Positions 10,458 through 34,595 of a DNA stretch of 64,000 nucleotides are shown here, piece after piece. The stretch lies in the IMG/VR virus record IMGVR_UViG_3300008954_003475, positions 124,001 to 188,000 of that record; one strand, given 5' to 3'. A program made the translations under genes and the position numbers. The notes under the pieces were generated by a model, which was not told the DNA's origin, made no database searches, and saw only the letters and a program-made list of their open reading frames with translations. How positions within the stretch are numbered: the stretch's first letter is position 1; each line of letters begins with the position of its first letter.

Positions 10458-11363
10458 CTAAATATTCAATGATTTTAATTTATATTCTGTTAAATTAATT
10501 GCATCATCTAAATATTTATTAACCAACTTTCTTTTAATAACCTCTTCTTTGAAAACGCCAACCAACGGTACGGTTGGAAGCAGCTTCATCTCAGACAAAT
10601 AATGCATTGTTATATCTGAATTATCATTAATTGATTCTGCAATTATTGAAGTAAGGAAAGCCTCTTTTAAAGCCCACTTATTTTCTCCAGTAAAACTTTC
10701 TCTATTATTTCTTGCAAAATCAATAATTTCATCATCAATAGAAAACTCATAACGAGCAGCAAAATTGATGGCTCTATAAATACGCCTAATATCATCACCA
10801 AGAGCAATTCTTGCAGGAACATTTGTTCTTATAATCTTTGCTTCTAAGTCTTCTTTGCCTTTGTTTGTAAAGTCAATAATTTCATCATCAAAAAATCTTT
10901 TATGTAAAGTATTTATTGTAAACTCTCTACTGTAAACTTCAAATAATTTTTCATCTTTAATATTTAGCTCTTTCATTATATACTCAACAACATCATCAGA
11001 TATAAAATTGCTTGAAAAATCAAACATTATATCATCTAAATAAACAGAAACATGTCCATCGCTGAAAAGCTTAAAGTTACTATTTAATTCATTAGCCAAA
11101 GTTATAGCCAACCTTGTTATATCGGCATCATTAGTTGTTATATCTATATCTCTATAATCTTCAACAGGAGCATTTCCGCCTTCCATCTGAAGAACCTGAA
11201 GCCTTCGGCTAACGCGACCCCTTGCCTCAAAAGCCCTCTCTTGCGCCTCTCCTATTCTGTTTAAATACAAAACCCTAGGAACTCCACCAACTATGTACGG
11301 TTCCGCTATATAGTTTTCTTTACAAATTTTTAATATTTTTGAATATATATCATCAAAATTCAT
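10458..11363 (-). CDS. tRNA nucleotidyltransferase / poly(A) polymerase family (class II CCA-adding-like), divergent
   Basis: YIVGGVPR, DIDITT (catalytic DxD), REFTINTL, DFTNKGKEDL, DDIRRIYRAINFAARY. Confidence 0.85.
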   Translation of the reverse strand: MNFDDIYSKILKICKENYIAEPYIVGGVPRVLYLNRIGEAQERAFEARGRVSRRLQVLQMEGGNAPVEDYRDIDITTNDADITRLAITLANELNSNFKLFSDGHVSVYLDDIMFDFSSNFISDDVVEYIMKELNIKDEKLFEVYSREFTINTLHKRFFDDEIIDFTNKGKEDLEAKIIRTNVPARIALGDDIRRIYRAINFAARYEFSIDDEIIDFARNNRESFTGENKWALKEAFLTSIIAESINDNSDITMHYLSEMKLLPTVPLVGVFKEEVIKRKLVNKYLDDAINLTEYKLKSLNI

Positions 11364-11388: not shown

Positions 11389-12936
11389 TTATACGGGCGG
11401 CCCTAAATCATCCGCTTCCGGCACCTGTTCCGCCTCAGGCGCAGGCTCTGCCACAGCCTCCTCTTCGGCCCCTGGAATCCCGCTTTGAGCATCGGCCATA
11501 GTCTTTGCGTTAGCAAGTTGTCCCATCATCTTTGTAACCCTTGTAAGAGCGTAAGAGAATGAGTCAATCAATTTGCTTTGTGACTCTGCAAGCTCTGGAA
11601 ACATAGATGCAATACCTATTTTGTCCAGCATAATATCAAACTCGGCTAATTGGCGAATAATACGCCTATCCGCAAGCATTCCCGCCACCTCGTCAAGCTT
11701 TCTGGCAGCATCTTCAACGCTTATATCTCCAGCCAACTCATCGTACTCCCCGGGTCTCGCCCCAGGAAGTGGGGTTATGTCTTCAAAGCTAGCCGCCTCT
11801 ACATCATCAGACTTTGGAATTCCATCCATAGGACCAGGAGGAGACTCCTCTTCTGCCGGGGCTTCACCCAAAGCTTCTGCCGGGGCTTCACCCAAAGCTT
11901 CTGCCGGGGCTTCACCCAAAGCTTCTGCCGGGGCTTCTGCCGGCATCTCTTCAGGAACTTCTTGAGCAATTTTCTTTAAAATTTCCGCACCTTCAGTGCA
12001 GCCAAACTTATTAAGCTTATTTGCAGTATTGTGAGTTACGTCAGATAGTGTACTGCTAAGCTTTAACATTTGAACTTGAAGACTTAAATGCATAAGATGT
12101 TCCGCAAGAGTCTTATAGGTCTCCGAATCCATATACTCATCTGTTCTCAAAAGCTTATCTATACGTCGTATTGCCGTATGAAGCTTTGACTTCCAAGAGC
12201 CAAATCGCTCACCGCGATGAGCCTTTCGCTCTGAGGCTTCTGCCGTCTCATCAAAAACAGATCCGTGAAAACTATCTCCCGGCATATTATTACCCTGACC
12301 TTTGTTTAAATATGCGCTTTGTCCTCCATGATAATACGGAGTTCCGCCTTGACCAAGGTTACTCATGTAAACAGATTCTTTTTTCATGTACTCATCCTCT
12401 TTTGAACTATATTTTAAATGCTCACCAGTGCTATAATATTTAAACCACTTTATAAACTTCAAATCTTCATCGCTATCTATATCTAAAAAATTACTATAAT
12501 AATCTAATGCATTTTGTTTTGTCATTTCATTTTTTGCTACAGAATCATAAATCAAATGAACTGTTTTTAGCCATCTATTTATATCAAATTCATCTTCTAT
12601 ATTTTCTCTATAATAATCAACATTAGGATATGCAATCTTTATTATCTTTTTATCTTTAGTTTTGCAACGAACAACGCTATAGTAAGCATCATTTAAATTA
12701 TTAATGTTTAACTTCAATAATTCTTTCTTTTCTTCTAAAGAAAGAACTATATTTAACTCTTTTGCTGCCTTTTTTATAAAAAAATGCCTTTCAAACTTTT
12801 TGTTACTATCAACACCCAAAGCAGTTAGGTGGACAGACTTCTCTGCAAGTTTATCAAACGCAGGCGTACTAGACGAAACAGGCATAGCTGCCAACTTTTT
12901 TATAAAAAAGTCATTTATTTCGTCTAGATTGCTCAT
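11389..12936 (-). CDS. hypothetical protein (possible scaffold/internal head protein) with EAPAEALG repeats
   Basis: 515 aa with several K-x-A sites, a motif variant TANKLNKFGCTEGAEILKKIAQ and a helical acidic C-terminus. Confidence 0.7.
   Translation of the reverse strand: MSNLDEINDFFIKKLAAMPVSSSTPAFDKLAEKSVHLTALGVDSNKKFERHFFIKKAAKELNIVLSLEEKKELLKLNINNLNDAYYSVVRCKTKDKKIIKIAYPNVDYYRENIEDEFDINRWLKTVHLIYDSVAKNEMTKQNALDYYSNFLDIDSDEDLKFIKWFKYYSTGEHLKYSSKEDEYMKKESVYMSNLGQGGTPYYHGGQSAYLNKGQGNNMPGDSFHGSVFDETAEASERKAHRGERFGSWKSKLHTAIRRIDKLLRTDEYMDSETYKTLAEHLMHLSLQVQMLKLSSTLSDVTHNTANKLNKFGCTEGAEILKKIAQEVPEEMPAEAPAEALGEAPAEALGEAPAEALGEAPAEEESPPGPMDGIPKSDDVEAASFEDITPLPGARPGEYDELAGDISVEDAARKLDEVAGMLADRRIIRQLAEFDIMLDKIGIASMFPELAESQSKLIDSFSYALTRVTKMMGQLANAKTMADAQSGIPGAEEEAVAEPAPEAEQVPEADDLGPPV
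11850..11937. repeat. 24-bp coding tandem repeat, about 3.7 copies
   Basis: cttctgccggggcttcacccaaag at 11850, 11874 and 11898 plus a partial copy; encodes EAPAEALG. Confidence 0.95.
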
Positions 12937-13860: not shown

Positions 13861-13899
13861 AAAATAAAAAGTCCTAGCTTTATATTACTAAGCCAGGAC
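13861..13899 (-). terminator. rho-independent terminator
   Basis: Minus strand GTCCTGGCTT-AGTAATATA-AAGCTAGGAC followed by TTTTTATTTT. Confidence 0.7.
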
Positions 13900-13923
13900 C
13901 TCTCTCTGTATTTTTAATATAAG

Positions 13924-14061
13924 TTATTTAGATAAATGCTCTTCTACCTGTTTTAAGCTCCACATCTTTGTCATACCATGACGACTCATCGCCTCAATCG
14001 TTTCCATGCCTAATATGCCATCTACTTCTAGAGATTCGTTCATTATTTTATTCAACTTGCT
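13924..14061 (-). pseudogene. in-frame peptidoglycan-binding-domain extension beyond the TAA of the 14062-15162 gene
   Basis: Reads GDSGNVMKL*SKLNKIMNESLEVDGILGMETIEAM...HLSK*; the stop sits where PG_binding_1 has LQ. Confidence 0.65.
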
Positions 14062-15162
14062 TTAAAGCTTCATAACATTGCCTGAGTCACCCCAGTCAGA
14101 GTGAAACATGCCCGCATTCTTTCTTAAAAGCACATCTAGATATGTAGCCTCTTTTGTCAGGCCTTTTCTGTCCAAATGTGTTGCAAGCTTGATGAGATTA
14201 TTGATTGCCTCAGAGGAGAAAGAGCTCATGCTCCCCATTCCGTCTACAATTGCCGCCTCTTCCTCGCTCAAATTGCCGTTAGTCATTTGCGCAAGCCTGC
14301 TTGAGTCTAGCTTATAATCCGAAGATGGATCCTCATGAGCCTTTAATAGTGCTGCAACCTCACCTGTGGTGAGCGGGCGATTCTCCCTGTCCTTAGCTTC
14401 GGCATCAGAAGGCTCATCGGCACCCGGCTCATGAACAATCGCATGCCCAGTGTCCAGTCCAAGCTTTTCTCTTACCCATGGGTCAGACTTATCAAGGCCT
14501 CTCATGCTTTTCTGAACCTCCTCTGTAGGAAGATCATCCGGCCCAAGGCCGGCCTCCTCCATCTTCATCTGCATTAAAGTCATTATCTCTTGTGTTGACA
14601 AAGCGTCGGCTGGATCTGGACCAGAATAAGTAAAGGCAGAATTCTTTCTTAAAAGCACGTCTAGATATGTAGCCTCTTTTTTCAGGCCCTTTCTGTCTAA
14701 ATGTGTTGCAAGATGCATTATACTTGTTTGAAGCGCCGCATGACCAGGAGGGAAGTCTCTTCCGTCCTCTGTCTTAAAGCCTTCGTTGTAATCATAAATC
14801 TTATTTGTATAAGGATCTTGAAATACACCATCAGACACTCTCTTCGCCTGCACGCCCACACGATCTGGCGAATAGCGAGTAGACAAATGTGTGGCTACAT
14901 ACTCCGTTGGCACATAAGAATCCTCATGCTCTGGACCAATGCCATACAGGCCCTCTCTGTCCCTTGAGACTGGATCTCCACCTCTTTGGGCTAGATATCT
15001 ATCACGGGTTGCATACTCAGCTACATTGGATTGAAAGTGCTGAAAAGCCCCATGTTGATCTCCAAGAGCAAACTTCTCAAGAGTTTCTAATCTACTCTCT
15101 TTGCCATCTTCCAATGCCAACTTTTCAATATACTCTAATCTGTTCTCTCTATCTTTAATCAT
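14062..15162 (-). CDS. hypothetical virion-type protein with two copies of the shared motif
   Basis: 366 aa; LATHLDRKGL.KEATYLDVLLRKN occurs twice; HLSTRYSPDRVG region. Confidence 0.75.
   Translation of the reverse strand: MIKDRENRLEYIEKLALEDGKESRLETLEKFALGDQHGAFQHFQSNVAEYATRDRYLAQRGGDPVSRDREGLYGIGPEHEDSYVPTEYVATHLSTRYSPDRVGVQAKRVSDGVFQDPYTNKIYDYNEGFKTEDGRDFPPGHAALQTSIMHLATHLDRKGLKKEATYLDVLLRKNSAFTYSGPDPADALSTQEIMTLMQMKMEEAGLGPDDLPTEEVQKSMRGLDKSDPWVREKLGLDTGHAIVHEPGADEPSDAEAKDRENRPLTTGEVAALLKAHEDPSSDYKLDSSRLAQMTNGNLSEEEAAIVDGMGSMSSFSSEAINNLIKLATHLDRKGLTKEATYLDVLLRKNAGMFHSDWGDSGNVMKL
14116..14712. repeat. 72-bp intragenic direct repeat (14116-14187 and 14641-14712)
   Basis: The two copies differ at 4 positions and encode the shared motif. 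Confidence 0.9.
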
Positions 15163-18909: not shown

Positions 18910-20070
18910 TCATTCTATGGAATTTATCAATGGATTAACGTCCTCTGCTGCCCCATCTGTTTCAAGAGCGCCAACGATAGGGTCTTTATATCCTAAATAT
19001 ATATCTCTAACCTCTTGATCATTAGCTTGTACAAAGCTGTCTCCGGATTCAACAAATGCCAATAAAGCTTTATCTCGGCCTCGTATCTTTTCTCCATTTA
19101 TAAGATAGCTCTGACTGCTTGGCCTTTCTATTAGGCCATACTTTACAGACAGATCAAAAACTTCTTCCTCGGCATTTACAATTCCTTTTTTATATTCTAC
19201 TTTATATTCGGCTTTGCGAAATGGCGCTCCAACCTTATTCTTCTGAATCTTAGCTCTAACCGTATGCCCAATCCGACCTCCCTCATCATCTTTTATAACC
19301 GAATCTGCACTAAAAACAGGAGCCATATTTATCATTAAACTGCATGCATGCTTAAGAGCCTTACCTCCAGGAGAGGTCGTTGGATCTCCAAACATTTGGC
19401 CTAAATTAACACGAACCTGATTAATGCCTATGAAGGCAACATTCGCTTGAGCAACAACCGGAGTAAGCTTCTTCAGCTCTGTGGACAAAAACCGTGGAAT
19501 TGGAGCCATATTTGCCTTGCCTATATCTGCAGAAATTTCCAATGGAGTATTCAAAACAGCTATTGAATCAAGAACTATTATTCCAAGATTTCTAAACCTA
19601 GGATCCTTCCCCTCTATAATATGATCCAAAATTCCCTTCATATTTTTTGATGCTTTTTTAGTTTTAGAATTAACCTTCATCGTTCCAATTAGTCCTTGGA
19701 AAATAGCTCTTGCATCATTAGTCTTTATCACCATAACCCTGGATATGTCTACGCCCTGATTCTGTGCCCACTCTGGATCATAAGTATATTCCGCATCTAT
19801 AAAAAGAGCTGTATTATCAGGATTCTCATCCAAGTAACTCTTTATGCACGATAAGGCAAGCATTGTTTTTCCAGAACTCTCTTGACCTGCAAGCTGAGTG
19901 ATCCTTCCCATAGGGATTCCGCCTATGCCTATCGACTCATCGAGCGCAGGACTGCCTGTACTTATTGCATCATATTTTGTAGAAATATTTCCATCGAAAA
20001 AGATCGTATCTTCCCCAAAGAAATTAACAATTTCTTTCTCGGCCTCAGAGGCCGTTATTTTTATCGACAT
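18910..20070 (-). CDS. recA: RecA/UvsX recombinase
   Basis: GQESSGKT, FIDAE, VLDSIA, INQVR, GGKALK, KNKV; start moved to ATG 20070 with a GGAG RBS. Confidence 0.95.
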   Translation of the reverse strand: MSIKITASEAEKEIVNFFGEDTIFFDGNISTKYDAISTGSPALDESIGIGGIPMGRITQLAGQESSGKTMLALSCIKSYLDENPDNTALFIDAEYTYDPEWAQNQGVDISRVMVIKTNDARAIFQGLIGTMKVNSKTKKASKNMKGILDHIIEGKDPRFRNLGIIVLDSIAVLNTPLEISADIGKANMAPIPRFLSTELKKLTPVVAQANVAFIGINQVRVNLGQMFGDPTTSPGGKALKHACSLMINMAPVFSADSVIKDDEGGRIGHTVRAKIQKNKVGAPFRKAEYKVEYKKGIVNAEEEVFDLSVKYGLIERPSSQSYLINGEKIRGRDKALLAFVESGDSFVQANDQEVRDIYLGYKDPIVGALETDGAAEDVNPLINSIE

Positions 20071-20081
20071 ATTCAACTCCT

Positions 20082-21737
20082 TTAATATTTGTGTCTCAAA
20101 GTACCCTCTTCTGGAGGGCGCCACCCCGTAGGCGGCTGCCAGCTTGACGGATTATTTGCCTGTTCCGATACAATCGCCTCTGTATTTATAAGAAGCAACG
20201 AAATACTTGCAGCATTCTGCAAAGCTATTCTCGACACCTTTTTCGGATCAATAACTCCGGCCTTAACCAAATCTTCAAACTTTCCATTAACAGCATTATA
20301 TCCAAGGTTAGAATTTCTTGATTTCAAAACTCGTTCAACAACTGCCTCATAATCTTCACATGCATTTTCAACGATTTGTCTAATCGGACGAATACATGCA
20401 TCTAAAAGAACCTTTGCCGCAGGAACCAGATCGGCATCCAAGCCTGACAAGCTAACTTTCTTAGCGGCCCTCAGAAGGGCAATGCCACCACCCGGAACAA
20501 AGCCCTCCTCTATGGCCGCCCTTGTTGCACAAATAGAGTCTTCAACCCTATCCCCCTTCTCTCTCAGCTCAAGCTCGGTTGAGTAGCCTACAGTCACAAT
20601 GGCTGCTTTATTTTGCAAATAAGCCATCCTTTTTCTTACATCAAGCCTAGCAGAATCTCCTATCAACTTGTCTAAGTCCTTCTGATAAATAGTTAGACGC
20701 TCATCTATTCTTGCTTGATCTTTTCTTCCCTCTAATATCTTAGTTAAATATTTATTTACAATAACCTTCTTTGCAAAGCCCAAATCCTCAACCTTAGCCT
20801 TTGATAAAGGATTTCCCAACTCTGTTCCGAATATTTTCGTTCCAGTAAGAATAGACATACACTCAAGCCATTCCGTTCTGCTTCCAGGGTCTATGCCTGT
20901 GGGCGGAAGATTAACGGCAACGGCTTTAATTCTTCCTAATTTATTATTTGCAACCAATGTAGCCAACGCTTCTTGCTTTACTGCTTTTGCTATAATCAAA
21001 ACTGGCAAGCTGTTATTTGATAATTCGTTAAGAAGGTCTATACAAGAAGACATTGACGTAATATCTTCATCACAAATTAAAATATTACAATTCTCAATCA
21101 CAACATCCGCCTGCTGTTCTTCTGTTAAAAATGCAGAAGTTACATAGCCGCTCTCAACCTCTACGCCGTCTACAAACCTAACCGAAGTATCTGGGCCTGG
21201 ACATGCCTCTGCGGCAACGGTCCCTTCTAAACCAACCGTATGAAATGCCTCTGCTATCTTATCGCCTATCTCTTGATCATTGTTTGCAGAAATTGTCGCA
21301 ATATTCCTAAGGGTCTCTAAATCACTTACCTCAGTTGCCATATCATTTAGATTAGTCACAACCTGCTTTACAGCCCACTGAACGCCCCGCTTGAAAAAGA
21401 GAGGACTATAATTATCATCTATTAACTCATTTCCTCTTTTTAAAATCTCATGAGCCAAAACAGTGGCAGTAGTTGTTCCGTCTCCGGCAATAGCTGCAGT
21501 TCGACCCGCAGCTTCTTTCACCAACTGACACGCCAGCTCTTCCACCGGGTGTTCAAGAGTTACCTCTCTAGCAACAGTTACACCATCCTTAGTTATAACG
21601 GGCGCTCCAACATATTTCCCCAGAATTACATTCTTACCTTGAGGCCCCATCGTAACGCCAACAGTCTTTGCGAGCTTTTCTGCTCCAGAAAGAAGCGCTG
21701 ATCGAGCTTCTTTGTTATAAGTTAAATCTTTAGCCAT
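20082..21737 (-). CDS. groEL: GroEL-like chaperonin
   Basis: TMGPQGKNV, ITKDGVTVA, GDGTTTATVLA, ISANND, VPGGG, GVIDP; no GGM tail. Confidence 0.95.
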   Translation of the reverse strand: MAKDLTYNKEARSALLSGAEKLAKTVGVTMGPQGKNVILGKYVGAPVITKDGVTVAREVTLEHPVEELACQLVKEAAGRTAAIAGDGTTTATVLAHEILKRGNELIDDNYSPLFFKRGVQWAVKQVVTNLNDMATEVSDLETLRNIATISANNDQEIGDKIAEAFHTVGLEGTVAAEACPGPDTSVRFVDGVEVESGYVTSAFLTEEQQADVVIENCNILICDEDITSMSSCIDLLNELSNNSLPVLIIAKAVKQEALATLVANNKLGRIKAVAVNLPPTGIDPGSRTEWLECMSILTGTKIFGTELGNPLSKAKVEDLGFAKKVIVNKYLTKILEGRKDQARIDERLTIYQKDLDKLIGDSARLDVRKRMAYLQNKAAIVTVGYSTELELREKGDRVEDSICATRAAIEEGFVPGGGIALLRAAKKVSLSGLDADLVPAAKVLLDACIRPIRQIVENACEDYEAVVERVLKSRNSNLGYNAVNGKFEDLVKAGVIDPKKVSRIALQNAASISLLLINTEAIVSEQANNPSSWQPPTGWRPPEEGTLRHKY

Positions 21738-23939: not shown

Positions 23940-24448
23940 TCCGTGACCCTCCGAACTGTTGGACCCGTACCTGCAACGGCCTTTTCCTTAGCAATACGCT
24001 TCAGCCTTGCCACCTTCAAATCTAAATCAGCACCCTCTGCCTCTTCGTCCATCTTGGATAACATTTCATTTCTCACTTCGTCTCTTATGCTGTCATAATC
24101 ATCTTCGTCACCTTGACCTTGGCCGGCTGCATCCTCAAACTCTTCAATCTCCCCTTCTCCATCGCTCAAAGCAGAGCCCTCTTGGAACTCCTGAACATCA
24201 TCGGAAGAAGCTTCTTCCGATCTTGTCGGGAAAAACTCTGTCAACATAAACAATGTTATATCAAAAATCAAATCCTCATTTAACTCTTGAGAAAATGATT
24301 GCTCTAAGATTCTGCTCTTTAAAAGCCTAAGTCTTTGCATGTGCAGATCTCCGAAAAGAGCAGCTCCACAAGACGGGCAGCAATTTTTGACGAGACTATG
24401 CCGCATAGTCTCAACAACTTCAAATTCACACCTTTTACAAGTAATCAT
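23936..24448 (-). CDS. Zn-ribbon protein with an acidic linker
   Basis: CKRC...CPSC at the N-terminus; ATGA-coupled to dnaE. Confidence 0.65.
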   Translation of the reverse strand: MITCKRCEFEVVETMRHSLVKNCCPSCGAALFGDLHMQRLRLLKSRILEQSFSQELNEDLIFDITLFMLTEFFPTRSEEASSDDVQEFQEGSALSDGEGEIEEFEDAAGQGQGDEDDYDSIRDEVRNEMLSKMDEEAEGADLDLKVARLKRIAKEKAVAGTGPTVRRVTE

Positions 24449-27400
24449 ACCTCTCTCCCATATACCCTCTCAAGAGAAGAAAGGGCTAAATCTTTTTGGT
24501 CCAAATAAGTATTGACTCTACATATGGCCTTAATTGGAATGCCGTCTTTCAACATAGTCCTATACTTTGCATAATCTTCGGCCCATAACGTTAAGCCACA
24601 AGTATCACCATTTATATCTTCCACAAGATATTTGGCAAACTTCTTGCCTACATTTTTACCATTTTTAATCTTAAATTCCTTAATTTTTGTTTTTATTATA
24701 GCTTCAATCTTTATTCTAGATCCACTATTCAAAGTGTCAATCTGCGACAAAGGCGTTACCAAAGAACCGCCCGAGAAAAAACTCTTAAAAACTTCGTGCA
24801 AATTTCCGCTCAAGGATCTTCCCAACACCTCTCTTTCGAAAAGAAGCGTCTCTTTTCTATCCCAACCCTCTTCTATCTTTCCAAACTCTAGTCCAGACAC
24901 TATCTCTCGAAATTCATTTGAATCTTTTGAAATAGAATGAACCTCAAATAATTCTGTTCTTCTATCTTTTGGAATCTTCTTTAGATTCGGATTATGTTTA
25001 AAAATTCTTGATTCAATCATCTTCTTAATTGCATTTTTAGCCTTCGAACGATACTTCTGATAATTATCATGCATATCCTTTCTTGTTCTGTCAAAACAAT
25101 CTAACGCTCCTGCTTTCGAAAGAGACTGTATAACCGTCTTCCCAACTGTTCTGCTGTCGTTTCTAGACAAGAAATCTGGATAATTTTCATAAGGCTGATT
25201 TTCCATTATACTCTCTATAGCCTTATCTCCAACACCTTTTATTGCAGATATTCCAGTTGAGATATTTCCATCTTCTAATATCTTATACCTGCCAACACTG
25301 TGATTTACGTTTGGCGGCAAAACCTCGATCCCCATCTTTCGACATTCATCAAGATACTCTTGCACTTTATCACTATTTGGATCTTCCGAATTTATTAATG
25401 CACACATAAATTGAGATGGATAATGACACTTTAACCATGCGGTATAAAAAGAAATGATAGAATAAGAAATCGAATGTGACTTATTAAAAGCATATCCGCC
25501 AAGCGGCTCTATATACGACTTCCAAATTTTGCACGCTATCTCATATGACATCTTACTGTATTCCATACAGTCTTTAACAAAGTTTGTTTCTGTGCGCAAA
25601 ACAAGCCTTGGATCCTTGCCCTTTAGCTTGCTTATCTTTCTCAAAGCATCAGCTTGATTCAAGTCCCATCCTGCGCAATCTTGCGCAATAATCATCGCCT
25701 GCTCTTCATACACCAAAACACCATAGGTCTTTTCCAAAGCTCTTTTTAAATTAGGATGCTCATATGTAGCCTTCTCCATTCCAAGCCTTCTCTTTGCATA
25801 GCGCTTCCTTTCGGCTGGCTTACAAGAGGGTCTTCCTATTGCGTTAATTGCAGATATATCTTCTATATTTTTAGGTTTAAGCCTTATACAGAAAGGCGTC
25901 AAAGAAGATTCTAATTGAAATAATCCAACAGTTTTACCCCGACCAATCATAGCATAGGCCTTTTCATCCTTCATGTCTATGTCTTCTACCGTAAGCTTTT
26001 CCCCAGTAGTTTCTTCAATAAGTTTAAATGCATTATCTATTACAGTAAGCGTCTTTAGGCCTAAAAGATCCATCTTTATAAGACCATTCTCTTCACACCT
26101 AGTCTTTTCCCACTGCGTTATATTGTGCCCTTCCTTATCTATTCTCAAAGGAATAGTTTCATATAATGCATTTTCACCAATAACCACACCTGCTGCATGC
26201 ATTGACCAGTTTCTTGTAAGATTTTGCAATTTAGACGCATACGCGTACAACTCTGGATATTGGCTCATATACTCTGACAGCTGTGTGCTTTCAGACATTG
26301 CATCATCTAGAGTTTCTGCATCAGGCATAATAGCCGTTATTGTATTTGCAATTTTAAAAGCAGAAGATTTATCCCCACCAAGCCTCAAACTTCTCGCAAC
26401 ATCTTTAATCACAACCCTTGGAGATAGAGTGCTCCAGTTAGATATAGAAGCAACTTTGTCCGATCCATACTTATCTTTTATATAATCTTTCACAATTCCA
26501 GGATCAGAAAAATCAGAATCAATATCTGGAAAAGACTTCTTTTGATTATTGTGAAATCTTTCAAAAATTAAGTCATACTCTATCGGGTCAACATTTGTTA
26601 TGCCTGTAAGATACGCTACAAGCGAACCAGCCGCCGAACCGCGAGCAGGGCCTACCGGCATTCTTTCCTTTGCCCAATTAACATAGTCTGCAACGATCAA
26701 CATATAGGATGAAAAATTCTTATCTTCCAATACAGACAACTCTGTCTTTACCCTCTCCCAATACTCATCTCTATCATCGTTGTCAAGATGAGACAGCTTA
26801 TCCTTAAAACCCTCGATGCACTTGTATCGAAGATATGCTTTATCATCCGGAACATTAGATCCCAAATTATCCTTCCACTCTCTGAACTCTTTAAAGTCTG
26901 GTTCTTCAGAAACGGAAAAAACAGGCAGCATGGCGCCTTTTGGTTTTATATAAGAAGGCTCAGCACATGCATTCATAATCTTTAATGAATTTTGCATACC
27001 TATTTCGGCAATCTTTGGACCAAAAAAATCAATAATTTCATTATGTGTTTTTAGATACATATCTTGAACACCATAACGAAACCTATCTGGATCATCTATT
27101 GCTTTTTTATCTTTGATAGCAAGCATGCAATCATGAAACTTTGCATGCTCCCTGTCTCTATAGTGAGCATCACAAGTTATGACATAAGGAATGTTATAAT
27201 CACTAGAAATTTTCAACAAAGACTCATTAAGTTTTATTTGATTTACTTCTTTTCCATTTTTATTTACAGCATAAAGACTGTGCGGCTGAAGTTCCAAAAA
27301 AAATCTATCTTTAAAAATACCATTCAATCTTTTAATATGCGACAAAGCCAAATCTTCTTCTTGCTCCGTTATAAGAGTTTTTGCCACGATACCATTGCAA

Positions 27401-27816
27401 CAAGCCGTTAATGCAAAAACTCCTTCATTATAATTCTCTATATGCTCCCAAGATATTCTAGGAGTTTGCTTTCCCATATATCCAGAAACCTGGTTTTGAT
27501 ATGATAAATAATTAAGCCTAAGAATATTTTTAAAACCAACTTCACTATTAGCCAAAAGAACCAAGTGATAAGACTTCTTGCTAGTTAAATCGTCTGTAAA
27601 ATATGCCTCCATCCCAGGAATAAGCTTTACACCAGTCTCTTGACTGGCTTTCCAAGCATCATATAATGCAGTCAATGTTCCATGATCTGTAACAGCAACT
27701 GCGGGATGACCAACCTCTTTAGCTCTTCTGAACAAATCATAAGTATCGTTCATCCCATCCAATGGGCTTCCTAGCTCTGTATGATTATGCAAAGATACAA
27801 AGGGACCTTTTACCAT
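24445..27816 (-). CDS. dnaE: DNA polymerase III alpha subunit (family C, DnaE)
   Basis: PHP domain (LHNHT, TDHG, GMEAY, CDAHY), GPARGSAAGS, FPDIDSDF, HAAGVV, KMDLLGL, YAFNKSH, C-terminal OB fold. Confidence 0.97.
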   Translation of the reverse strand: MVKGPFVSLHNHTELGSPLDGMNDTYDLFRRAKEVGHPAVAVTDHGTLTALYDAWKASQETGVKLIPGMEAYFTDDLTSKKSYHLVLLANSEVGFKNILRLNYLSYQNQVSGYMGKQTPRISWEHIENYNEGVFALTACCNGIVAKTLITEQEEDLALSHIKRLNGIFKDRFFLELQPHSLYAVNKNGKEVNQIKLNESLLKISSDYNIPYVITCDAHYRDREHAKFHDCMLAIKDKKAIDDPDRFRYGVQDMYLKTHNEIIDFFGPKIAEIGMQNSLKIMNACAEPSYIKPKGAMLPVFSVSEEPDFKEFREWKDNLGSNVPDDKAYLRYKCIEGFKDKLSHLDNDDRDEYWERVKTELSVLEDKNFSSYMLIVADYVNWAKERMPVGPARGSAAGSLVAYLTGITNVDPIEYDLIFERFHNNQKKSFPDIDSDFSDPGIVKDYIKDKYGSDKVASISNWSTLSPRVVIKDVARSLRLGGDKSSAFKIANTITAIMPDAETLDDAMSESTQLSEYMSQYPELYAYASKLQNLTRNWSMHAAGVVIGENALYETIPLRIDKEGHNITQWEKTRCEENGLIKMDLLGLKTLTVIDNAFKLIEETTGEKLTVEDIDMKDEKAYAMIGRGKTVGLFQLESSLTPFCIRLKPKNIEDISAINAIGRPSCKPAERKRYAKRRLGMEKATYEHPNLKRALEKTYGVLVYEEQAMIIAQDCAGWDLNQADALRKISKLKGKDPRLVLRTETNFVKDCMEYSKMSYEIACKIWKSYIEPLGGYAFNKSHSISYSIISFYTAWLKCHYPSQFMCALINSEDPNSDKVQEYLDECRKMGIEVLPPNVNHSVGRYKILEDGNISTGISAIKGVGDKAIESIMENQPYENYPDFLSRNDSRTVGKTVIQSLSKAGALDCFDRTRKDMHDNYQKYRSKAKNAIKKMIESRIFKHNPNLKKIPKDRRTELFEVHSISKDSNEFREIVSGLEFGKIEEGWDRKETLLFEREVLGRSLSGNLHEVFKSFFSGGSLVTPLSQIDTLNSGSRIKIEAIIKTKIKEFKIKNGKNVGKKFAKYLVEDINGDTCGLTLWAEDYAKYRTMLKDGIPIKAICRVNTYLDQKDLALSSLERVYGREV

Positions 27817-28229: not shown

Positions 28230-31200
28230 TTATTTGGTTAATTTTAGCCACAAAGCTTGCAGCTCCGTGCTTTGTATTATACCACTACGATAAATATGTC
28301 TCTTTAGATTTTCAGAATATTTTATAAGATTAAATCTGTGAAAACCTTGACGCTCTATGCCCGTAATATCTTGAGCTAATTCATTTAGCATATGATTTAT
28401 CAAATACTCACTAAGCGCCTCAGCATACTTTTGTGCTCCAATATGCTTTGTTTTTTTCAAAATCTTAACAAATCTTGCAAGCTCCTTTGGATCCTCTGGA
28501 ACAGGATAATATCTCTGAGAATTCGGTATTCCCTCAAAGGCTTCAAACGCATAAAGATCATCTGCGGTAAGAATCGTTTCCGAATCAGGATCTCTAGCCT
28601 CTTCCAGGCGCTTCTTCTTTTTGTCCGGTGCAAAGATAACGTTTAACATCTTTATATAAGCATGAGGCTCTTCAGTGTCTACATCAACCTCGCTACTTAA
28701 TCCGACCGGATAATATGAACTAGTACCCTTTACCCATGATCCAAATCTATCAAACATTTTTCCGCCTGATAAATTAACTGCAGAAGTTCGTCTTTTCGGA
28801 CTCAACCCCATCCACGGGAAGCCGTCACCCCCAGAATAAGATCCCTCATCATCGTCATCTCCGATTTTATAGCCAAACAATCTTTCGCATTCTTTTCTTG
28901 TGATGGACCCATTTCTAAAAAGCCTATTAACAGGGTCAAGCAAATCAGTTGGATCTATATATCTCCCTCCAAGCTCTTCGCCTATAAGTCTTGCTAGTTT
29001 GTCTAGCCCATGAACATTAATTAAAAATTGCTCGATAGCCTCCATAGTCTCATTGACAACCTCCGGGCCATCTTCCGCATTCCACAATTGGTGTCCGCCG
29101 AACTCTGGTCCATATTGAGGATTCATAGCCGATATCATCCTATGCATTGTAACCCAATCAACAAGCGGCAAATATGCCGAAACTCTTGGGGAAAACTTAT
29201 CTGAAGCATGGGCAGCGCCAAGGGTTCCTATACTCTTTCTGTCAACCTTTGTACCGCTCTTTGAGTTTTCAACATAGTATGGAAGCCCCCGGTATGTATT
29301 GTGCAGGCTGGATATGACCTCTTTATATCGATCCGTTATCATCCCTCTTTCAGCATCATTTGCTGCCAAGCTAAGGTCATGACTCATCTTGCTGTAAGCT
29401 AAGTTTATTTCTCTTAGCAGCGTAAAAGCAGCATCTGGAGGATCTCTAAGTAAAAAGTCTGATACATCTAACTCTATCATATCTCCCGGCCTTGAGGTCG
29501 GGAGAGATATGGGAATTCTGGCCCCAATTATTGGAAAGATCTTATTCTTCTTTGAGTCATTATTTTCATAATCCAAAGGAATTGGCACGCCAACATTATT
29601 TACCCCATTTACAGGACTAGGCGGAAACAAATTATCTGTTCCACTTCTTATCGCCAGCGGCCCAATGTGAAGGCCGGCCTGAGAGTCATATCCAAGCTCT
29701 GAATTCTGATATCCCATAACAGCCTCTTCTTCAAGAACAGCCGAAGTTCCCGGATGATATATCAAACTAACTCCAGACTTAACTCCAGCATTTGTTTTTC
29801 TATCCGCCATCTTATAGTGATCTGTTGAAACCTGATAAATCTTCCAGCCGTTTGCCCTATATTCTTCTGGCAATCTATCATAAAGATCTTCTAGCTCTAT
29901 CGACATTGGAAGATTTTTATTTGAAAGAACATATATATTGTTCAAACTTGAAGGCTCTGGAATATTAATATTAAAATCATGATAAACAGCCCCCCTGCCT
30001 GTTAGCGCAAAAATTGGATAATAATCTTCCCGCCCCTTATACTCGACCAGATATGCTCCAAACAAGGGAACCAAACTATTTGGATCAACAGGCTCAGAAT
30101 CACTAGAGCCAAAATGTTCTGCATATTTTCCATCTGAATTAAGACTTATGGTTGTTATTGGAGGATTTGACATGACATTATCAACAATCAACCTTGCCCT
30201 ATCAACATCTGCCTCTAATGCAGTAGAGCTATCCAAAACCTCATTAAACTCACCCTGGATATACTCTATAGCTTTTTTCATATATATTTGAGAAGAACAC
30301 GCTGTTCTCATTCTAAACATTTCATCCTGAAGAGCTGTTACGCAACCTACAATATTATCAAAATGCATTTCATAAAAAACATTAATCTTGTCTTCACTCA
30401 TCGTCATAGATCTAATAACTCCCGGGTCGAGACCTATTGTTAACGAGTCTAAGTTTTGACGCTCTAAGTTTAAAACCTTATCCGCACTGGACAAATCAAT
30501 CCCTATCGAATAACCTATATACTCTTTAGAGTTTAAATCACGCATATAAAAGTTATACACTCTAGATACTGCATCGGCAAGATACAAGGCAGAAGATGCC
30601 TGCAAGACTCTTGCCATGAATTCTTTCCCCTTCATCTTTGGAATCATAAGTCCAGGATTACTGCTGGACAGAATTCTGCTTTCTTGCTCTCTAGTTAAAT
30701 CCGGAACGAATGTGCTCCTAAAGTTATCTAGCAAAGTTCTTATATTATTTCCACCATAGCTCAAGGCTGCGATATGATCTAGTGCTAATCTGTTATTTTC
30801 AAACAAAGTAAGCTCATAGCTTCTAGACTCTTCTGGGCCAAGCTGGTCTGTTGCTGCGCTAATTACTGAATGCACTATATTATTCATTATCTTTTCATTA
30901 CTAATAATATCAAACGACTCGCCCCAAACCCCAATCAGCCTAAGGTCCAAGCCATCGAGTCTTTTGTAGTATTTTTCTTTAAACTTTTGCAAAGCAGAAT
31001 CTACAAGGGATGTCAACTCAATCGGAAGATCAGACCCCTCTTCGTCTTCTTGTTCAATACTTCTAACTATAACATCTATAATGGACCTAGCCGATTCAAG
31101 CATTGCATGCTCATCTGACTCTTCAAGCAAAATAGGAGACCCTATCAATGCTCCTTTTATATCCAAAGTTGTAGACATTGCGAGCCAATCCTGTATATTG

Positions 31201-34200
31201 ACAATAAAGGATTTAAGAGTCCTTCCAACGGGCGAAGTTATTCTCACAAGACCTCCCACACCGTCCTCTATCAAATCATCTTTGGCCCTATCAAATACTC
31301 CAGCGGCCTCTTGATTGTCAAACCTTTGCTTTGCAGCTTTAGTTCCAGAGTCTACACCTCTAAGCTTTCCTTCCGAATCCTTCTTTCCTCCCGGATCTAA
31401 TGCTGAGCCTCTATTCTCATCAATCACCTTTATAGTGTCTGGATCACGAGCTTCTTTTTGCCTCGTAGAGCTTAATCGGTACCCCTCTTCAGACCCCCAA
31501 AGATATTGTTTTGGTACCGCTCCAAAGCTGTATGATCCCTCTCCGTAATGATCACTAAACGCAACTCTGCTTACCTTATCTACCCTATCGACCCAGTCTT
31601 CATATGAAAGCCTTCTGTCGTCCCCACTCAATGTAGCCCATTCTTCAACCGGAACTATATAACTGCTACCATTTTTGCTTCTTAATTTAAGCGTACTCTG
31701 AAAATTATCATAACCTTCGGAAAAAAGAAGGCCAGAGTCAATTATCTCTTTCCATGTATATACCGCTCTTCTTCTGTTTCTAAGGTTAATACCCGTATGT
31801 GTTCTTCCAAAAAAGACAGAATCTTTTATTGTAAACCTATGGCTATGTGGACACACAAGTTTTATATCTCCCAATATATCCATCCTGGTCAATGCGGATT
31901 CCACGCCCTGATCGTCTGACCATTGACCAACGGAAGCGCCTAAGTTTGCCGGTGAAGCCATAGCTAATGCTAAGATATTTGAAAGCCTATTGAGTCGTCC
32001 AGACTTTTCAAGCTCGGCAACAGCAGCTGTTGGGCTTTCTATGTTTGAAACAAAAGGAAGAATATCATCAATATCTACTCCAAGGTAAATCAACGTCTCA
32101 ATCAAATTTGTCATAAAAAACTTTGAAAACTCATTATTCTCTTCAGCCTTAGACACTAAATCTTTTATAATCCCAGGCAAAGAGCCTTCTTCGTTCGCGC
32201 TTCTGCTGAACGATGACAGACTAGTTTGAGCTCCACAAACAAAATAAGACAAAGTTCCTTCTTCAATATCTGCGTAACTTCCATCTGAATTCACAGGAAG
32301 CCGAATGTGTCCTGCAGAAATTTTATCTTCAGTTACAGGGCCGGCAATAGGCGTTGCTATATAAGAATATTTCTTCATATATTCTTTATATTTTTTTCTA
32401 AATGTAAGCGGACTCCTATCCTCCTCTGGAATTACAATTCTAGCAGGACAATTAAAATACTTATTAGAAAACTTCCACCCACCGCCGCGTCTGCGTCTAA
32501 GCTCTTCAACGAAACCTAGCTTTTGCTCTTCTGTTATACTTCCAAGCTGTATAGCCTCATCCAATTGAGCCTCTAAGCGTTCTTCCGGATCCTCCTCCAT
32601 ACTTCCAAGCCTTGTGGACTGCAGACTTTCTGGCGACACCCCATGAGCATCAGGCCCCAGCAGGGGCGTTGCGTCTATGGCTAGGCCGCACTTAAACCTA
32701 GCCCTTGTCTCTGAGACCTCACCCAGACTTGATGGGCGATCTTCAATGCTTGAGTATGGACACTTATATTTAAAATTAGAAACCTCTTTCTTTCTTGTAG
32801 GAATAGGTCTTGCGCCCATCAGTCGTAACGCCCAAGATCTTCTCTGCACTCCCTCGATATGCTTTGATCTAGAACCCGAATGCACCAACGCCTCTATCTC
32901 AGACCAAGACATCGACCCCTCGCCTCTTTCGGCCAAGGTAGGCGGAGGGTCAAACGATTCAACCGCATTAAGTTCGTCCAATGTTATTAAGCTATTATCT
33001 TCGACTCTAAACAGACTATACCTATCATCTTCATATTCTGAATACTCTCTTAAATCTATCCGACTAGGCCTGCCCTCAACTCCTGGGGTATCTTGTCTTT
33101 TTCTGGTATATATCTTTGTTCCACAAATTGCACAATCAGCATAATTCCAACTAGTAGTCACAACTCCAAAGGCTTTTTTGTAAGCGCCCTCTTGAAGCAT
33201 ATTTCTCTTTATAGAACCAGCAAGATAGGTTGACAAAGAGGATCTCAACCAACCGCTGCTATCACTGCTGTTGAAAAACTTTTTTAACTTACTTGTAAGT
33301 TGATGCTCTAAATCTTCTGCATATATATTCTTCCACTCATCATATGTTTCTCGCAATTTTTTTGATAATTTATACTGATATGCTTCCGATTCTATATCTA
33401 CAAACACTAATCCTATTGCTAAATCATAAAAAAGCCTAAACAACTGTGATGTCTCATCTTTTATTACATTAGAAATCTTATATGTATCTCTAAAGTCTGA
33501 TACATCTACGCCCTGCCCTTTTAGCTTATAAACCAAGCTTAGAGCATGACTATCTCTCTTCTTTATAGCTGCAGCTATATCATCTAAAGATCCGGAGAAG
33601 GACTGCCTCTGAGTCTCAAACTCTCTAAGTCTTTGATGAAAATTTTCAAAGCTCTCTCCTGCTAACTTGCCCTTGCTTTTTCTGACTGCATTATTTAAAG
33701 AGCTCAAAGAGGAAACCAATGCCTGAATAATTCCTTGCATTTTTTCTACAGAAAAAACCAGCTTAGGCGGATCAGAAGATTCATCTACGCTAAAAGAAAC
33801 AGCGTTATCTCCAAGCTCTTCAAAGATTGGGTGAAAATTTAAAGCATTAACATTCTCATCTTCTTCTTGAGCTTTTGCCAGCCTATTTACATAAGAGTCT
33901 TCAGATTCGTCTGACTCAAAGAACTTTTGTTCTAAATTCATATTTAAATACAAATTATGTATAACAGAAATATCATCTCTTATTTTGACATTCTTCTTAA
34001 GTATGTCATCCACAGGTCGTGAAATTGGTATACCGCCTATGGTCGGCACAGGAACAGCTTCTGGCTCAGCTTCGGGCTCAGCACCTGGCTCACTCAGTGT
34101 TATGGAAATATCTGAAAAATCATCTTTAACAAAATTAGAAAAACCATATGCTACAACAAACAACTGCACGGGCTCTTCGAATGGACTAATGCTATCTAAG

Positions 34201-34595
34201 TCTAAACTAAAACCTGAAATAATCTCCGAAAGCTCTTCAGCTACAGCCTCAAGGCCCCCAGACGCAAACGCCCCTCCTAATGATTCTGTTAAATCTTTTA
34301 TAGAAAGACCGCCCTGTTCGGTTGAATCTTCCTCTATCTCGACATACTCAGGATCATCCTCATCTTCTGATTCACCACCAAAACTAGGAACCCACTCAGC
34401 GCCCTGCAAATCCTCTTCGTCTTCGTATGCGCCCTCATCTTCTAACTCTTCATCTTCATCTGCAGCGGACATCAGAACTGCCATCTCTACTGCTCTGTTA
34501 AGGTTAGAGTGTAAATTCCCCAAAGAAACAAGAAATTCATCCAGGTTGTCATCCCCTACCTGACTTATAACCACCTGTATCTTCTCGTTGTCCAT
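28230..34595 (-). CDS. giant orphan protein (2121 aa) with a sigma-region-2-like segment and several Cys motifs
   Basis: Uninterrupted ORF with AGGAGG RBS; acidic N-terminus; CAIC, KCP, KCG, NCP, VCG, VCPHSH. Confidence 0.8.
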   Translation of the reverse strand: MDNEKIQVVISQVGDDNLDEFLVSLGNLHSNLNRAVEMAVLMSAADEDEELEDEGAYEDEEDLQGAEWVPSFGGESEDEDDPEYVEIEEDSTEQGGLSIKDLTESLGGAFASGGLEAVAEELSEIISGFSLDLDSISPFEEPVQLFVVAYGFSNFVKDDFSDISITLSEPGAEPEAEPEAVPVPTIGGIPISRPVDDILKKNVKIRDDISVIHNLYLNMNLEQKFFESDESEDSYVNRLAKAQEEDENVNALNFHPIFEELGDNAVSFSVDESSDPPKLVFSVEKMQGIIQALVSSLSSLNNAVRKSKGKLAGESFENFHQRLREFETQRQSFSGSLDDIAAAIKKRDSHALSLVYKLKGQGVDVSDFRDTYKISNVIKDETSQLFRLFYDLAIGLVFVDIESEAYQYKLSKKLRETYDEWKNIYAEDLEHQLTSKLKKFFNSSDSSGWLRSSLSTYLAGSIKRNMLQEGAYKKAFGVVTTSWNYADCAICGTKIYTRKRQDTPGVEGRPSRIDLREYSEYEDDRYSLFRVEDNSLITLDELNAVESFDPPPTLAERGEGSMSWSEIEALVHSGSRSKHIEGVQRRSWALRLMGARPIPTRKKEVSNFKYKCPYSSIEDRPSSLGEVSETRARFKCGLAIDATPLLGPDAHGVSPESLQSTRLGSMEEDPEERLEAQLDEAIQLGSITEEQKLGFVEELRRRRGGGWKFSNKYFNCPARIVIPEEDRSPLTFRKKYKEYMKKYSYIATPIAGPVTEDKISAGHIRLPVNSDGSYADIEEGTLSYFVCGAQTSLSSFSRSANEEGSLPGIIKDLVSKAEENNEFSKFFMTNLIETLIYLGVDIDDILPFVSNIESPTAAVAELEKSGRLNRLSNILALAMASPANLGASVGQWSDDQGVESALTRMDILGDIKLVCPHSHRFTIKDSVFFGRTHTGINLRNRRRAVYTWKEIIDSGLLFSEGYDNFQSTLKLRSKNGSSYIVPVEEWATLSGDDRRLSYEDWVDRVDKVSRVAFSDHYGEGSYSFGAVPKQYLWGSEEGYRLSSTRQKEARDPDTIKVIDENRGSALDPGGKKDSEGKLRGVDSGTKAAKQRFDNQEAAGVFDRAKDDLIEDGVGGLVRITSPVGRTLKSFIVNIQDWLAMSTTLDIKGALIGSPILLEESDEHAMLESARSIIDVIVRSIEQEDEEGSDLPIELTSLVDSALQKFKEKYYKRLDGLDLRLIGVWGESFDIISNEKIMNNIVHSVISAATDQLGPEESRSYELTLFENNRLALDHIAALSYGGNNIRTLLDNFRSTFVPDLTREQESRILSSSNPGLMIPKMKGKEFMARVLQASSALYLADAVSRVYNFYMRDLNSKEYIGYSIGIDLSSADKVLNLERQNLDSLTIGLDPGVIRSMTMSEDKINVFYEMHFDNIVGCVTALQDEMFRMRTACSSQIYMKKAIEYIQGEFNEVLDSSTALEADVDRARLIVDNVMSNPPITTISLNSDGKYAEHFGSSDSEPVDPNSLVPLFGAYLVEYKGREDYYPIFALTGRGAVYHDFNINIPEPSSLNNIYVLSNKNLPMSIELEDLYDRLPEEYRANGWKIYQVSTDHYKMADRKTNAGVKSGVSLIYHPGTSAVLEEEAVMGYQNSELGYDSQAGLHIGPLAIRSGTDNLFPPSPVNGVNNVGVPIPLDYENNDSKKNKIFPIIGARIPISLPTSRPGDMIELDVSDFLLRDPPDAAFTLLREINLAYSKMSHDLSLAANDAERGMITDRYKEVISSLHNTYRGLPYYVENSKSGTKVDRKSIGTLGAAHASDKFSPRVSAYLPLVDWVTMHRMISAMNPQYGPEFGGHQLWNAEDGPEVVNETMEAIEQFLINVHGLDKLARLIGEELGGRYIDPTDLLDPVNRLFRNGSITRKECERLFGYKIGDDDDEGSYSGGDGFPWMGLSPKRRTSAVNLSGGKMFDRFGSWVKGTSSYYPVGLSSEVDVDTEEPHAYIKMLNVIFAPDKKKKRLEEARDPDSETILTADDLYAFEAFEGIPNSQRYYPVPEDPKELARFVKILKKTKHIGAQKYAEALSEYLINHMLNELAQDITGIERQGFHRFNLIKYSENLKRHIYRSGIIQSTELQALWLKLTK

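What the first reader, a model, noticed from the sequence alone, without database searches (positions are those of the whole stretch)
13924..14100. Peptidoglycan-binding domain interrupted by an in-frame TAA at the conserved Gln position
Seen: TGG GGT GAC TCA GGC AAT GTT ATG AAG CTT TAA AGC AAG TTG AAT... gives WGDSGNVMKL*SKLNKIMNESLEVDGILGMETIEAM, open for 45 more codons and followed by a terminator. Known: the PG_binding_1 pattern is G..G..V..LQ..L......VDG.FG..T..A, so the stop replaces Q (CAA to TAA). Inference: a recent nonsense mutation, a population variant or assembly error, or regulated readthrough giving forms with and without cell-wall binding. The intact downstream frame suggests the change is recent or the extension is still expressed.
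Basis: partly seen in the sequence, partly recalled or inferred. Interest (0 to 1): 0.6.

Follow-up and report, generated by a model that had tools for sequence, protein, structure and literature searches.

The report
Cell-wall-binding tail silenced by alternative stops
An uncultured marine jumbo phage has recently gained a small peptidoglycan-binding-like tail on one protein, and every sampled copy has it switched off by one of two different premature stop codons, which points to selection against making the tail rather than to a sequencing error or a special genetic code.

Summary
A minus-strand gene (14062-15162, 366 aa) stops at TAA 14062-14064. The frame stays open for 45 more codons, then comes a second TAA and a terminator hairpin.

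- **Genome:** a 222-kb marine jumbo-phage record that uses the standard code. TAA is its commonest stop and no suppressor tRNA was found.
- **Not an error:** 12 loci fetched from independently assembled samples carry the same TAA.
- **Origin of the tail:** it lies in a 194-nt segment that the closest relative (86% identical protein) lacks. Nearly all 64 family members end just before it.
- **Identity of the tail:** a divergent, shortened PG_binding_1-like module, below Pfam's cut-off. An exhaustive search, a local profile and a fold model all support this assignment. The TAA sits exactly at the conserved Gln.
- **Second allele:** They carry TAG instead of TGG (Trp357) ten codons upstream and differ from the window nowhere else in 2.7 kb.

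So there are two alleles, each with one stop, and no intact allele was seen. The best reading is two independent knock-outs of a recently acquired module. Readthrough has no positive support.

The parts
14062..15162 (-). Host gene as it terminates in this allele (366 aa). It belongs to an uncharacterised protein family of marine jumbo phages, with a conserved N-terminal domain and repeated helical hairpins of the type LATHLD.KGL.KEA.YLD.LL.K.
   Evidence: ORF list. 64 homologues. Alignment A2. AF2 pLDDT 72.6 with no fold match.
13921..14114 (-). Lineage-specific 194-nt segment. It replaces 16 nt, including the TGA stop, of the closest relative L026. It holds the 17-residue tail, the TAA, the 45 open codons and the second TAA.
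   Evidence: DNA alignments A1 and A3 and BLAST breakpoints. Most family members end at or just after the last LL(R/K)K motif.
13927..14091 (-). Divergent, shortened PG_binding_1-like module (codons 358-412), interrupted at codon 367.
   Evidence: Pfam below threshold. Atlas features 0.93. The exhaustive phmmer search finds six true PG_binding_1 proteins. Local profile 26.0 bits, aligned across the stop. AF2 three-helix model at pLDDT 82, with PG-binding domains as top structural neighbours at Z 4.3-4.8.
14062..14064 (-). TAA, codon 367, at the invariant Gln position of the LQ motif. It is CAA in allele B (L035, L036).
14092..14094 (-). TGG, Trp357, intact in this allele. It is TAG in allele B.
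13927..14061 (-). 45-codon open frame after the TAA. Its codon usage lies between this genome's coding and non-coding sequence. Neither the internal TTG nor the internal ATG has a Shine-Dalgarno motif.
13924..13926 (-). Second TAA, which closes the module's frame.
13861..13905 (-). Intrinsic-terminator-like hairpin plus U-run. It is shared almost unchanged with L026 and lies after the module, not after the first TAA.
   Evidence: Fold and alignment. The simple scanner missed it; I counted a 9-nt loop by eye, above its stated limit of 8.

Best explanation
The TAA is a genuine nonsense codon that works as a terminator.

**Shown.** This phage lineage carries a 194-nt 3' segment that its relatives lack. 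The segment removed the original stop of an otherwise conserved gene and fused a small PG_binding_1-like three-helix module to the protein's C-terminus. In every genome sampled, the module is cut off by one premature stop.
- Allele A (the window and most samples): Gln367 CAA has become TAA.
- Allele B: Trp357 TGG has become TAG.
- The two alleles differ at no other base in 2.7 kb.

**Inferred.**
- An intact TGG...CAA form existed very recently.
- It was knocked out twice independently.
- Selection therefore disfavours the fused module. One possible reason is that the family's conserved C-terminal helical hairpin normally sits at the free C-terminus.
- The protein made is the 366-aa form (356 aa in allele B). 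Both are close to the canonical family length and lack cell-wall binding.
For: - **Standard code.** ORFs of at least 100 aa under table 11 cover 94% of the record. TAA ends 86 of 175 long ORFs.
- **The TAA is real.** It is identical in 12 fetched loci and in contigs from three runs.
- **Relatives lack the module.** This holds for L026 and nearly all of the 64 homologues. None was found in five related jumbo-phage records, in viral contigs, or beyond its own cluster among 1.84 billion representative proteins.
- **Module identity.**
- **Allele B.** It has CAA plus TAG and exactly two differences in 2709 and 1559 nt.
- **Non-random pattern.** The chance that two random substitutions are both stop/sense changes inside the 62-codon module is about 1e-5.
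- **No intact form found.** The exact-sequence cluster holds only 366-, 283- and 265-aa members. No hit covers the extension.
- **Efficient stop contexts.** TAA-A and TAG-G are the commonest four-base contexts for TAA and for TAG at natural gene ends in this genome.
Against: - Allele B is known only from two short contigs (three samples). Linkage to the rest of the genome and hitch-hiking cannot be judged.
- Only assembled contigs were available at depth 3.6-7, so a minority intact allele could exist unseen.
- The probability calculation is post hoc.
- Partial intact proteins of 100-226 aa would have escaped the length-filtered searches.
- The function of the host protein is unknown, so the reason why the fusion would be harmful is conjecture.
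- The module's frame carries no second lesion. That is also what a functional extension would show, although overall divergence is so low that decay is not yet expected.
Confidence: 0.65

Rival explanations
1. Functional leaky termination. A single stop near the start of the module is kept by selection, so that a small fraction of the protein carries the cell-wall-binding tail. The stop has merely moved between codon 357 (UAG) and codon 367 (UAA).
For: - Both alleles have exactly one stop and an otherwise unbroken module.
- No zero-stop or two-stop allele was seen.
- The terminator lies after the module.
- Near-cognate reading of UAA by tRNA-Gln would restore the native residue (general knowledge).
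Against: - UAA is the least leaky stop (general knowledge; for mammalian cells, the abstract of PMC5829715 as listed).
- TAA-A and TAG-G are the genome's most used terminator contexts for TAA and for TAG.
- No stable structure follows the stop (z -1.5).
- No suppressor tRNA is present in this record or in relatives, including one that is 94% complete.
- The +1 and -1 frames close after 3 and 5 codons.
- No relative conserves the arrangement.
- Divergence is too low for the open frame to count as evidence of constraint.
Confidence: 0.1
2. Neutral debris. The inserted segment is a captured fragment of a foreign PG-binding gene that never functioned in this phage. The two alleles are chance variants in dead DNA.
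For: - Codon usage of the extension is atypical. It falls at the 4th percentile of real coding windows, and 12% of stop-free shuffles score as well. GC3 is 0.42 against 0.31 for genes.
- The module is shortened relative to PG_binding_1 and below Pfam's cut-off.
Against: Under neutrality it is very unlikely that the only two differences in 2.7 kb are a stop gain at one codon and a stop/sense change at another codon of the module (about 1e-5; about 1e-4 by my rough estimate without a tool, if only synonymous and module sites are counted). A two-stop intermediate followed by a precise TAA-to-CAA reversion would be needed if TAA were ancestral.
Confidence: 0.12
3. Separate small peptides. After termination, ribosomes restart at the ATG six codons downstream. 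This gives a 39-aa peptide in allele A and a 49-aa peptide in allele B, each carrying part of the module.
For: - Gene callers annotated both small ORFs (P0066, P0077).
- In both alleles an ATG lies six codons after the stop.
Against: - There is no Shine-Dalgarno motif before the window's TTG or ATG, whereas 90 of 130 long ORFs have one.
- The 39-aa product lacks helix 1 of the domain.
- I see no export signal (by eye, no tool), so a cytoplasmic fragment could not reach the cell wall.
Confidence: 0.05
4. Artefact or recoding. Either an assembly or sequencing error, or TAA is read as Gln in this phage.
For: None beyond the open downstream frame.
Against: - Identical TAA in many independent assemblies.
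- TAA ends about half of the long ORFs, and ORFs of at least 100 aa under table 11 cover 94% of the record.
- The only tRNA in the record is Leu(UAA anticodon).
Confidence: 0.01

Closest known systems
PG_binding_1 (PF01471) cell-wall-binding domains of endolysins from phages of Gram-negative hosts, e.g. phiKZ gp144 (3bkh) and Burkholderia phage AP3 endolysin (5nm7)
   Same: - The shared motif V..LQ..L...DG.(F/L)G..T..A, with Q, L, D, G and T invariant in A4.
- A predicted three-helix module.
- These domains are among the top structural neighbours: 5nm7 at Z 4.6 and 3bkh at Z 3.7.
- The same phage has a regular PG_binding_1 + Amidase_2 endolysin elsewhere.
   Different: - It scores below Pfam's cut-off (18.7 against 23 bits).
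- It lacks the FQ...GL.VDG.VG third of the domain.
- It sits at the C-terminus of a non-lytic protein family of unknown function.
- It is interrupted by a stop in every sampled copy.
Programmed stop-codon readthrough that gives a C-terminally extended minor protein (Q-beta A1 protein at a leaky UGA; from general knowledge)
   Same: An in-frame stop is followed by an open extension that could add a binding function to a fraction of the molecules.
   Different: - The stop here is UAA (or UAG in the other allele), in the genome's preferred terminator contexts.
- There is no stimulatory structure.
- There is no conservation in relatives.
- The stop's position differs between alleles.
Accessory C-terminal binding domains added to phage structural proteins by programmed frameshift (Ig-like domains; from general knowledge)
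   Same: The idea of two isoforms, one with and one without an accessory binding module at the C-terminus.
   Different: The +1 and -1 frames close within 3 to 5 codons here, so no frameshift product can include the module.
Loss-of-function nonsense polymorphism, with parallel knock-outs in natural populations (general concept)
   Same: Two independent transitions (C to T and G to A on the coding strand) each create a stop in the same small module, on an otherwise identical background.
   Different: This is seen in an uncultured jumbo phage and in a module that seems only just acquired. No intact allele was sampled.

Membership tests
PG_binding_1 (PF01471) | Score at or above Pfam's gathering cut-off (23 bits) | tested here: not met
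   Window extension alone: 14.9 bits, E 0.031. X-joined piece: 14 bits. Natural CAA allele L035:468-632: 18.7 bits, E 0.002, profile positions 4-33.
PG_binding_1 (PF01471) | Sequence homology to bona fide members | tested here: met
   phmmer of the 45-aa extension against 1.84 billion proteins gave six multi-copy PG_binding_1 proteins at E 3e-6 to 2e-4. Each is confirmed by Pfam at E 1e-28 to 1e-149. Their E-values are helped by repeated domains. The local profile gives 26.0 bits across the stop. Atlas features score 0.93 to PG_binding_1 clusters.
PG_binding_1 (PF01471) | Conserved LQ..L and DG.FG..T..AV motifs with correct spacing | tested here: met
   In A4, Q10, L13, D24, G28 and T31 are invariant in all 21 rows, including the phage module. 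The window's TAA is that Q.
PG_binding_1 (PF01471) | Complete domain, including the second FQ...GL.VDG.VG..T part | tested here: not met
   A4 shows no counterpart of that segment. The module ends in a different 20-residue helix.
PG_binding_1 (PF01471) | Three-helix bundle fold | tested here: inconclusive
   The AF2 model has three helices at pLDDT 82.4. The top VIA-align matches are PG-binding domains at Z 4.3-4.8 and Foldseek gives E above 5. Z is low, and the model used an alignment of PG_binding_1 domains.
PG_binding_1 (PF01471) | Binds peptidoglycan | not testable with these tools
   Needs a pull-down of the expressed module with purified sacculi.
Programmed stop-codon readthrough | Leaky stop and context, and/or a stimulatory 3' RNA element | tested here: not met
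   UAA-A and UAG-G are the commonest four-base contexts for TAA and for TAG at natural gene ends here. The downstream fold has z -1.5. Rfam finds nothing.
Programmed stop-codon readthrough | Stop and downstream frame conserved among relatives | tested here: not met
   Relatives lack the module altogether. Within the species the stop sits at two different codons.
Stop-codon reassignment or suppressor-tRNA recoding in phages | The stop is rarely used as a terminator, in-frame stops occur across many genes, and a suppressor tRNA is present | tested here: not met
   TAA ends 86 of 175 long ORFs, and ORFs of at least 100 aa under table 11 cover 94% of the record. The only tRNA is Leu(UAA anticodon). 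Relatives carry sense tRNAs only. Only 66% of the genome is in the record.

The most novel reading that the evidence does not exclude
The stop is a working part rather than damage. The phage may need only a trace of the cell-wall-binding isoform, made by rare readthrough. Alternatively, it may switch the module on and off at population level by reversible nonsense changes. In either case exactly one stop near the module's start would be maintained while its position drifts between UAG at codon 357 and UAA at codon 367.
Probability: 0.1. Interest if true: 0.7.

Novelty: new member of a known kind. Interest (0 to 1): 0.4.

Why it matters
On its own, this is a divergent peptidoglycan-binding-like module silenced by a nonsense codon, which is an ordinary kind of event.

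What makes it worth a note is the population picture. On an otherwise identical 2.7-kb background, two alternative stops ten codons apart each truncate the same freshly acquired module, and no intact copy was sampled. That is a rare natural snapshot of domain gain followed by rapid, parallel loss in an uncultured jumbo phage. It also gives a concrete handle on an abundant but uncharacterised marine jumbo-phage protein family: its free C-terminus may matter.

It is a useful caution as well. An in-frame stop inside a domain in a phage genome need not mean recoding.

Tried and rejected
**Alternative code or suppressor.** Rejected.

**Assembly error.** Rejected.

**Frameshift bypass at CUU-UAA-A, a prfB-like look.** Rejected, because both shifted frames close at once.

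**Donor of the module.**
- None in the same genome (tblastn).
- None in five related records.
- None in viral contigs.
- The metagenome pattern scan hit only unrelated bacterial PG_binding_1 genes.
- The word search of residues 351-412 found nothing.

**Function of the host protein.**
- Pfam and PHROGs found nothing.
- The AF2 model had no match in PDB, BFVD or the Atlas.
- Longer family members carry no known C-terminal domains.

**Other searches that gave nothing.**
- A PDB sequence search of the tail gave chance hits only.
- The phage collection held no homologue.
- Rfam gave one sub-threshold snoRNA hit, taken as chance.
- Literature searches for the samples and for comparable cases gave nothing specific.
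- The 277-kb assembly of the same phage could not be scanned for tRNAs because the record is not held.

**Restrictions I kept to.**
After that I did not send that piece to any outward tool. I used the natural CAA allele (L035:468-632) for Pfam and folding instead.
- The only changed code named was TAA=X, as a placeholder. No residue was assigned to a stop.

Full report
**What is in the sequence**

On the minus strand, an ORF runs from 15162 to 14062 (366 aa). It ends ...LLRKNAGMFHSDWGDSGNVMKL and then TAA at 14062-14064. The same frame continues for 45 codons (13927-14061) to a second TAA (13924-13926). A strong hairpin followed by a U-run lies just downstream, at about 13861-13905. The next gene, 228 aa, starts at 13851. 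At this base composition, 45 open codons after a stop have a chance of about 0.03.

**Genome and genetic code**

The window is bases 124001-188000 of a single 221,878-bp virus record.
- GC content is 38.5%, and CheckV estimates the record as 66% complete.
- Nearly all genes lie on one strand.
- Neighbouring genes include a GroEL-like chaperonin, RecA, a primase, a sigma region-4 protein, DNA polymerase III alpha, an SbcC-like ATPase and a large terminase.
- Relatives reach 317 kb at 94% completeness, so this is a marine jumbo phage.

Under table 11, ORFs of at least 100 aa cover 94% of the record. TAA ends 86 of 175 long ORFs, against 47 for TAG and 42 for TGA. The only tRNA is Leu with anticodon UAA. 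Related records carry only sense tRNAs. Nothing in the genome shows another code.

**The TAA is real**

Logan contigs of three runs cover 14062-14064 without a difference. One of those runs may be the source sample, and one comes from a second study. Twelve loci fetched from JGI, ENA and Logan assemblies are 100% identical to the window and carry TGG...TAA.

**The tail is a lineage-specific addition**

The protein belongs to an uncharacterised family with 64 homologues in marine metagenomes and jumbo-phage contigs.
- The family has a strongly conserved N-terminal domain and repeated helical hairpins.
- Nearly all members end at or just after the last ...YLD.LL(R/K)K motif.
- The closest relative, L026, has an 86% identical protein. 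It ends RKNV-TGA, followed by the same terminator and the same 228-aa gene.
- BLAST breakpoints show that window 13921-14114 (194 nt) replaces 16 nt of L026.

Some more distant members carry other, unrelated C-terminal extensions, none with a Pfam domain.

No relative of the module was found in any of these places:
- the same genome;
- five related records;
- viral contigs;
- the word-indexed protein search;
- beyond its own cluster, among 1.84 billion representative proteins.

**What the tail is**

Pfam gives only sub-threshold matches for the window's sequence. PG_binding_1 scores 14-15 bits (E 0.03-0.06) and PG_binding_3 scores E 0.04.

Several other lines of evidence agree with that assignment.
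- The Atlas language-model search with the 45-aa extension alone puts PG_binding_1 clusters on top, at 0.93.
- The exhaustive phmmer search with the same 45 residues returns its own ORF, two repeat proteins taken as noise, and six proteins that Pfam confirms as multi-copy PG_binding_1 proteins.
- A local profile of their 24 domain copies aligns without gaps across the stop and places the stop on the Q of the LQ motif.
- In that profile, the residues upstream of the stop add 3.6 bits. Only 0.3% of shuffled tails and 1.25% of natural 17-residue tails do as well.

This last test is unbiased for the upstream part, because those proteins were retrieved with the downstream part only.

**The second allele**

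The exact-sequence cluster of the small downstream ORF contains a 49-aa member, P0077, that begins MKLQSK.... Its contigs are L035 (2731 nt, seen in two samples) and L036 (1559 nt). They differ from the window at exactly two bases:
- window 14064, where the codon is CAA instead of TAA;
- window 14093, where the codon is TAG instead of TGG (Trp357).

So there are two alleles.
- **Allele A** has TGG...TAA. It is found in the window and 12 other fetched loci.
- **Allele B** has TAG...CAA.

Each has one stop in the module, ten codons apart. No intact TGG...CAA protein appears in the protein collection, and neither does a full-length allele-B protein.

If substitutions fell at random on this 2709-nt stretch, the chance that both are stop/sense changes within the 62-codon module is about 1e-5. 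This calculation is post hoc.

**Further tests with the natural CAA allele**

The natural piece L035:468-632 (55 aa) was used for three further tests.
- **Pfam.** PG_binding_1 scores 18.7 bits at E 0.002. The match now runs across the Gln but is still under the 23-bit cut-off.
- **Alignment.** With 20 true domains, Q10, L13, D24, G28 and T31 are invariant. The FQ...GL.VDG.VG third of the domain is missing.
- **Fold.** AF2 gives three helices at pLDDT 82.4. A Foldseek-independent search of 48,161 chains ranks three PG-binding domains first: 5tv7 at Z 4.8, phage AP3 endolysin 5nm7 at Z 4.6, and 4xxt at Z 4.3. Lower down the list are phiKZ gp144 (3bkh), SleB and L,D-transpeptidases.

The Z values are low, and the model was built with a PG_binding_1 alignment, so I count the fold evidence as supportive only.

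**Interpretation**

The most economical history has three steps.
1. A recent recombination replaced the gene's 3' end and fused a small PG-binding-like module to it.
2. An intact form existed briefly.
3. It was truncated twice independently, by C-to-T at codon 367 and by G-to-A at codon 357.

Passing from one allele to the other through a two-stop intermediate would need a precise neutral reversion, which is far less likely. Two independent knock-outs on an otherwise unchanged background argue that making the fused tail is disadvantageous. The family's normal ending right after the conserved hairpin suggests why, but that step is conjecture.

The product in this window is then the 366-aa protein without cell-wall binding.

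**Readthrough and other rivals**

Nothing positive supports functional readthrough.
- TAA-A and TAG-G are the commonest four-base contexts for TAA and for TAG at natural gene ends in this genome.
- No unusual structure follows the stop.
- No suppressor tRNA is seen.
- Shifted frames close within 3 to 5 codons.

Readthrough cannot be excluded, because both alleles keep exactly one stop and an unbroken module. However, divergence is too low for that to carry weight.

Independent translation of the 39-aa or 49-aa ORFs is unlikely. The window's start codons have no Shine-Dalgarno motif, and I see no export signal (by eye, no tool).

**Limits**

- Only contigs, not reads, could be laid, at depth 3.6-7.
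- Allele B is known from short contigs only.
- A third of the genome is not in the record.
- The host protein's function remains unknown: no Pfam, PHROGs or fold match was found.

Noticed in passing
window 11850-11937 (minus-strand ORF 11389-12936): A perfect 24-nt tandem repeat of 3.7 copies encodes PAEALGEA-type repeats in a 515-aa protein of unknown function. The allele-B contig L035 ends inside it, probably an assembly break.
   Followed up: partly
G000:C1:21462-22412 (-), outside the window (L022:739-1689): A 317-aa endolysin-like ORF with an N-terminal PG_binding_1 (24.9 bits) and an Amidase_2 domain. So the phage has a regular, intact cell-wall-binding lysin of its own.
   Followed up: partly
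window 62856-63998 and beyond (G000:C1:186859-188367 and 188390-190720, minus strand): Two adjacent large ORFs (503-aa and 777-aa frames) each hold a weak PG_binding_1-like stretch (21.5 and 12 bits), next to low-complexity GDQQ and GAGTDP repeats. Function unknown.
   Followed up: partly
window 14062-15162 and homologues P0002-P0065: The host family is widespread in marine jumbo-phage contigs. It has no Pfam, PHROGs or fold match. It has a near-invariant N-terminal block (DQHG.FQHF...STRYSPDR...DPYTNK.YDYN.GF) and 2-3 copies of a helical hairpin motif. The middle and C-terminal parts vary between members.
   Followed up: partly
window 28230-34595 (-): A 2121-aa ORF with no Pfam match. It is preceded in the same frame by a 449-aa ORF ending in TAG. 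The junction has a canonical AGGAGG-spacer-ATG, so these are ordinary adjacent genes, not readthrough.
   Followed up: yes
G000:C1:209931-210016 (-); also G001 and G003: tRNA-Leu (anticodon UAA) is the only tRNA in this 222-kb record. The same tRNA type is also found in related jumbo-phage records, which otherwise carry 1-7 sense tRNAs.
   Followed up: partly
window 14043-14045 and 14071-14073: In both alleles an ATG lies exactly six codons after the allele's stop. Gene callers therefore annotate a 39-aa ORF in allele A and a 49-aa ORF in allele B. This is probably coincidence.
   Followed up: partly
window 10458-11363, 18910-20124, 20082-21737, 24445-27816: A CCA-adding/poly(A)-polymerase-like enzyme, RecA, a GroEL-type chaperonin and a DnaE-type DNA polymerase III alpha are encoded close together. 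This is a gene set typical of large phages.
   Followed up: no
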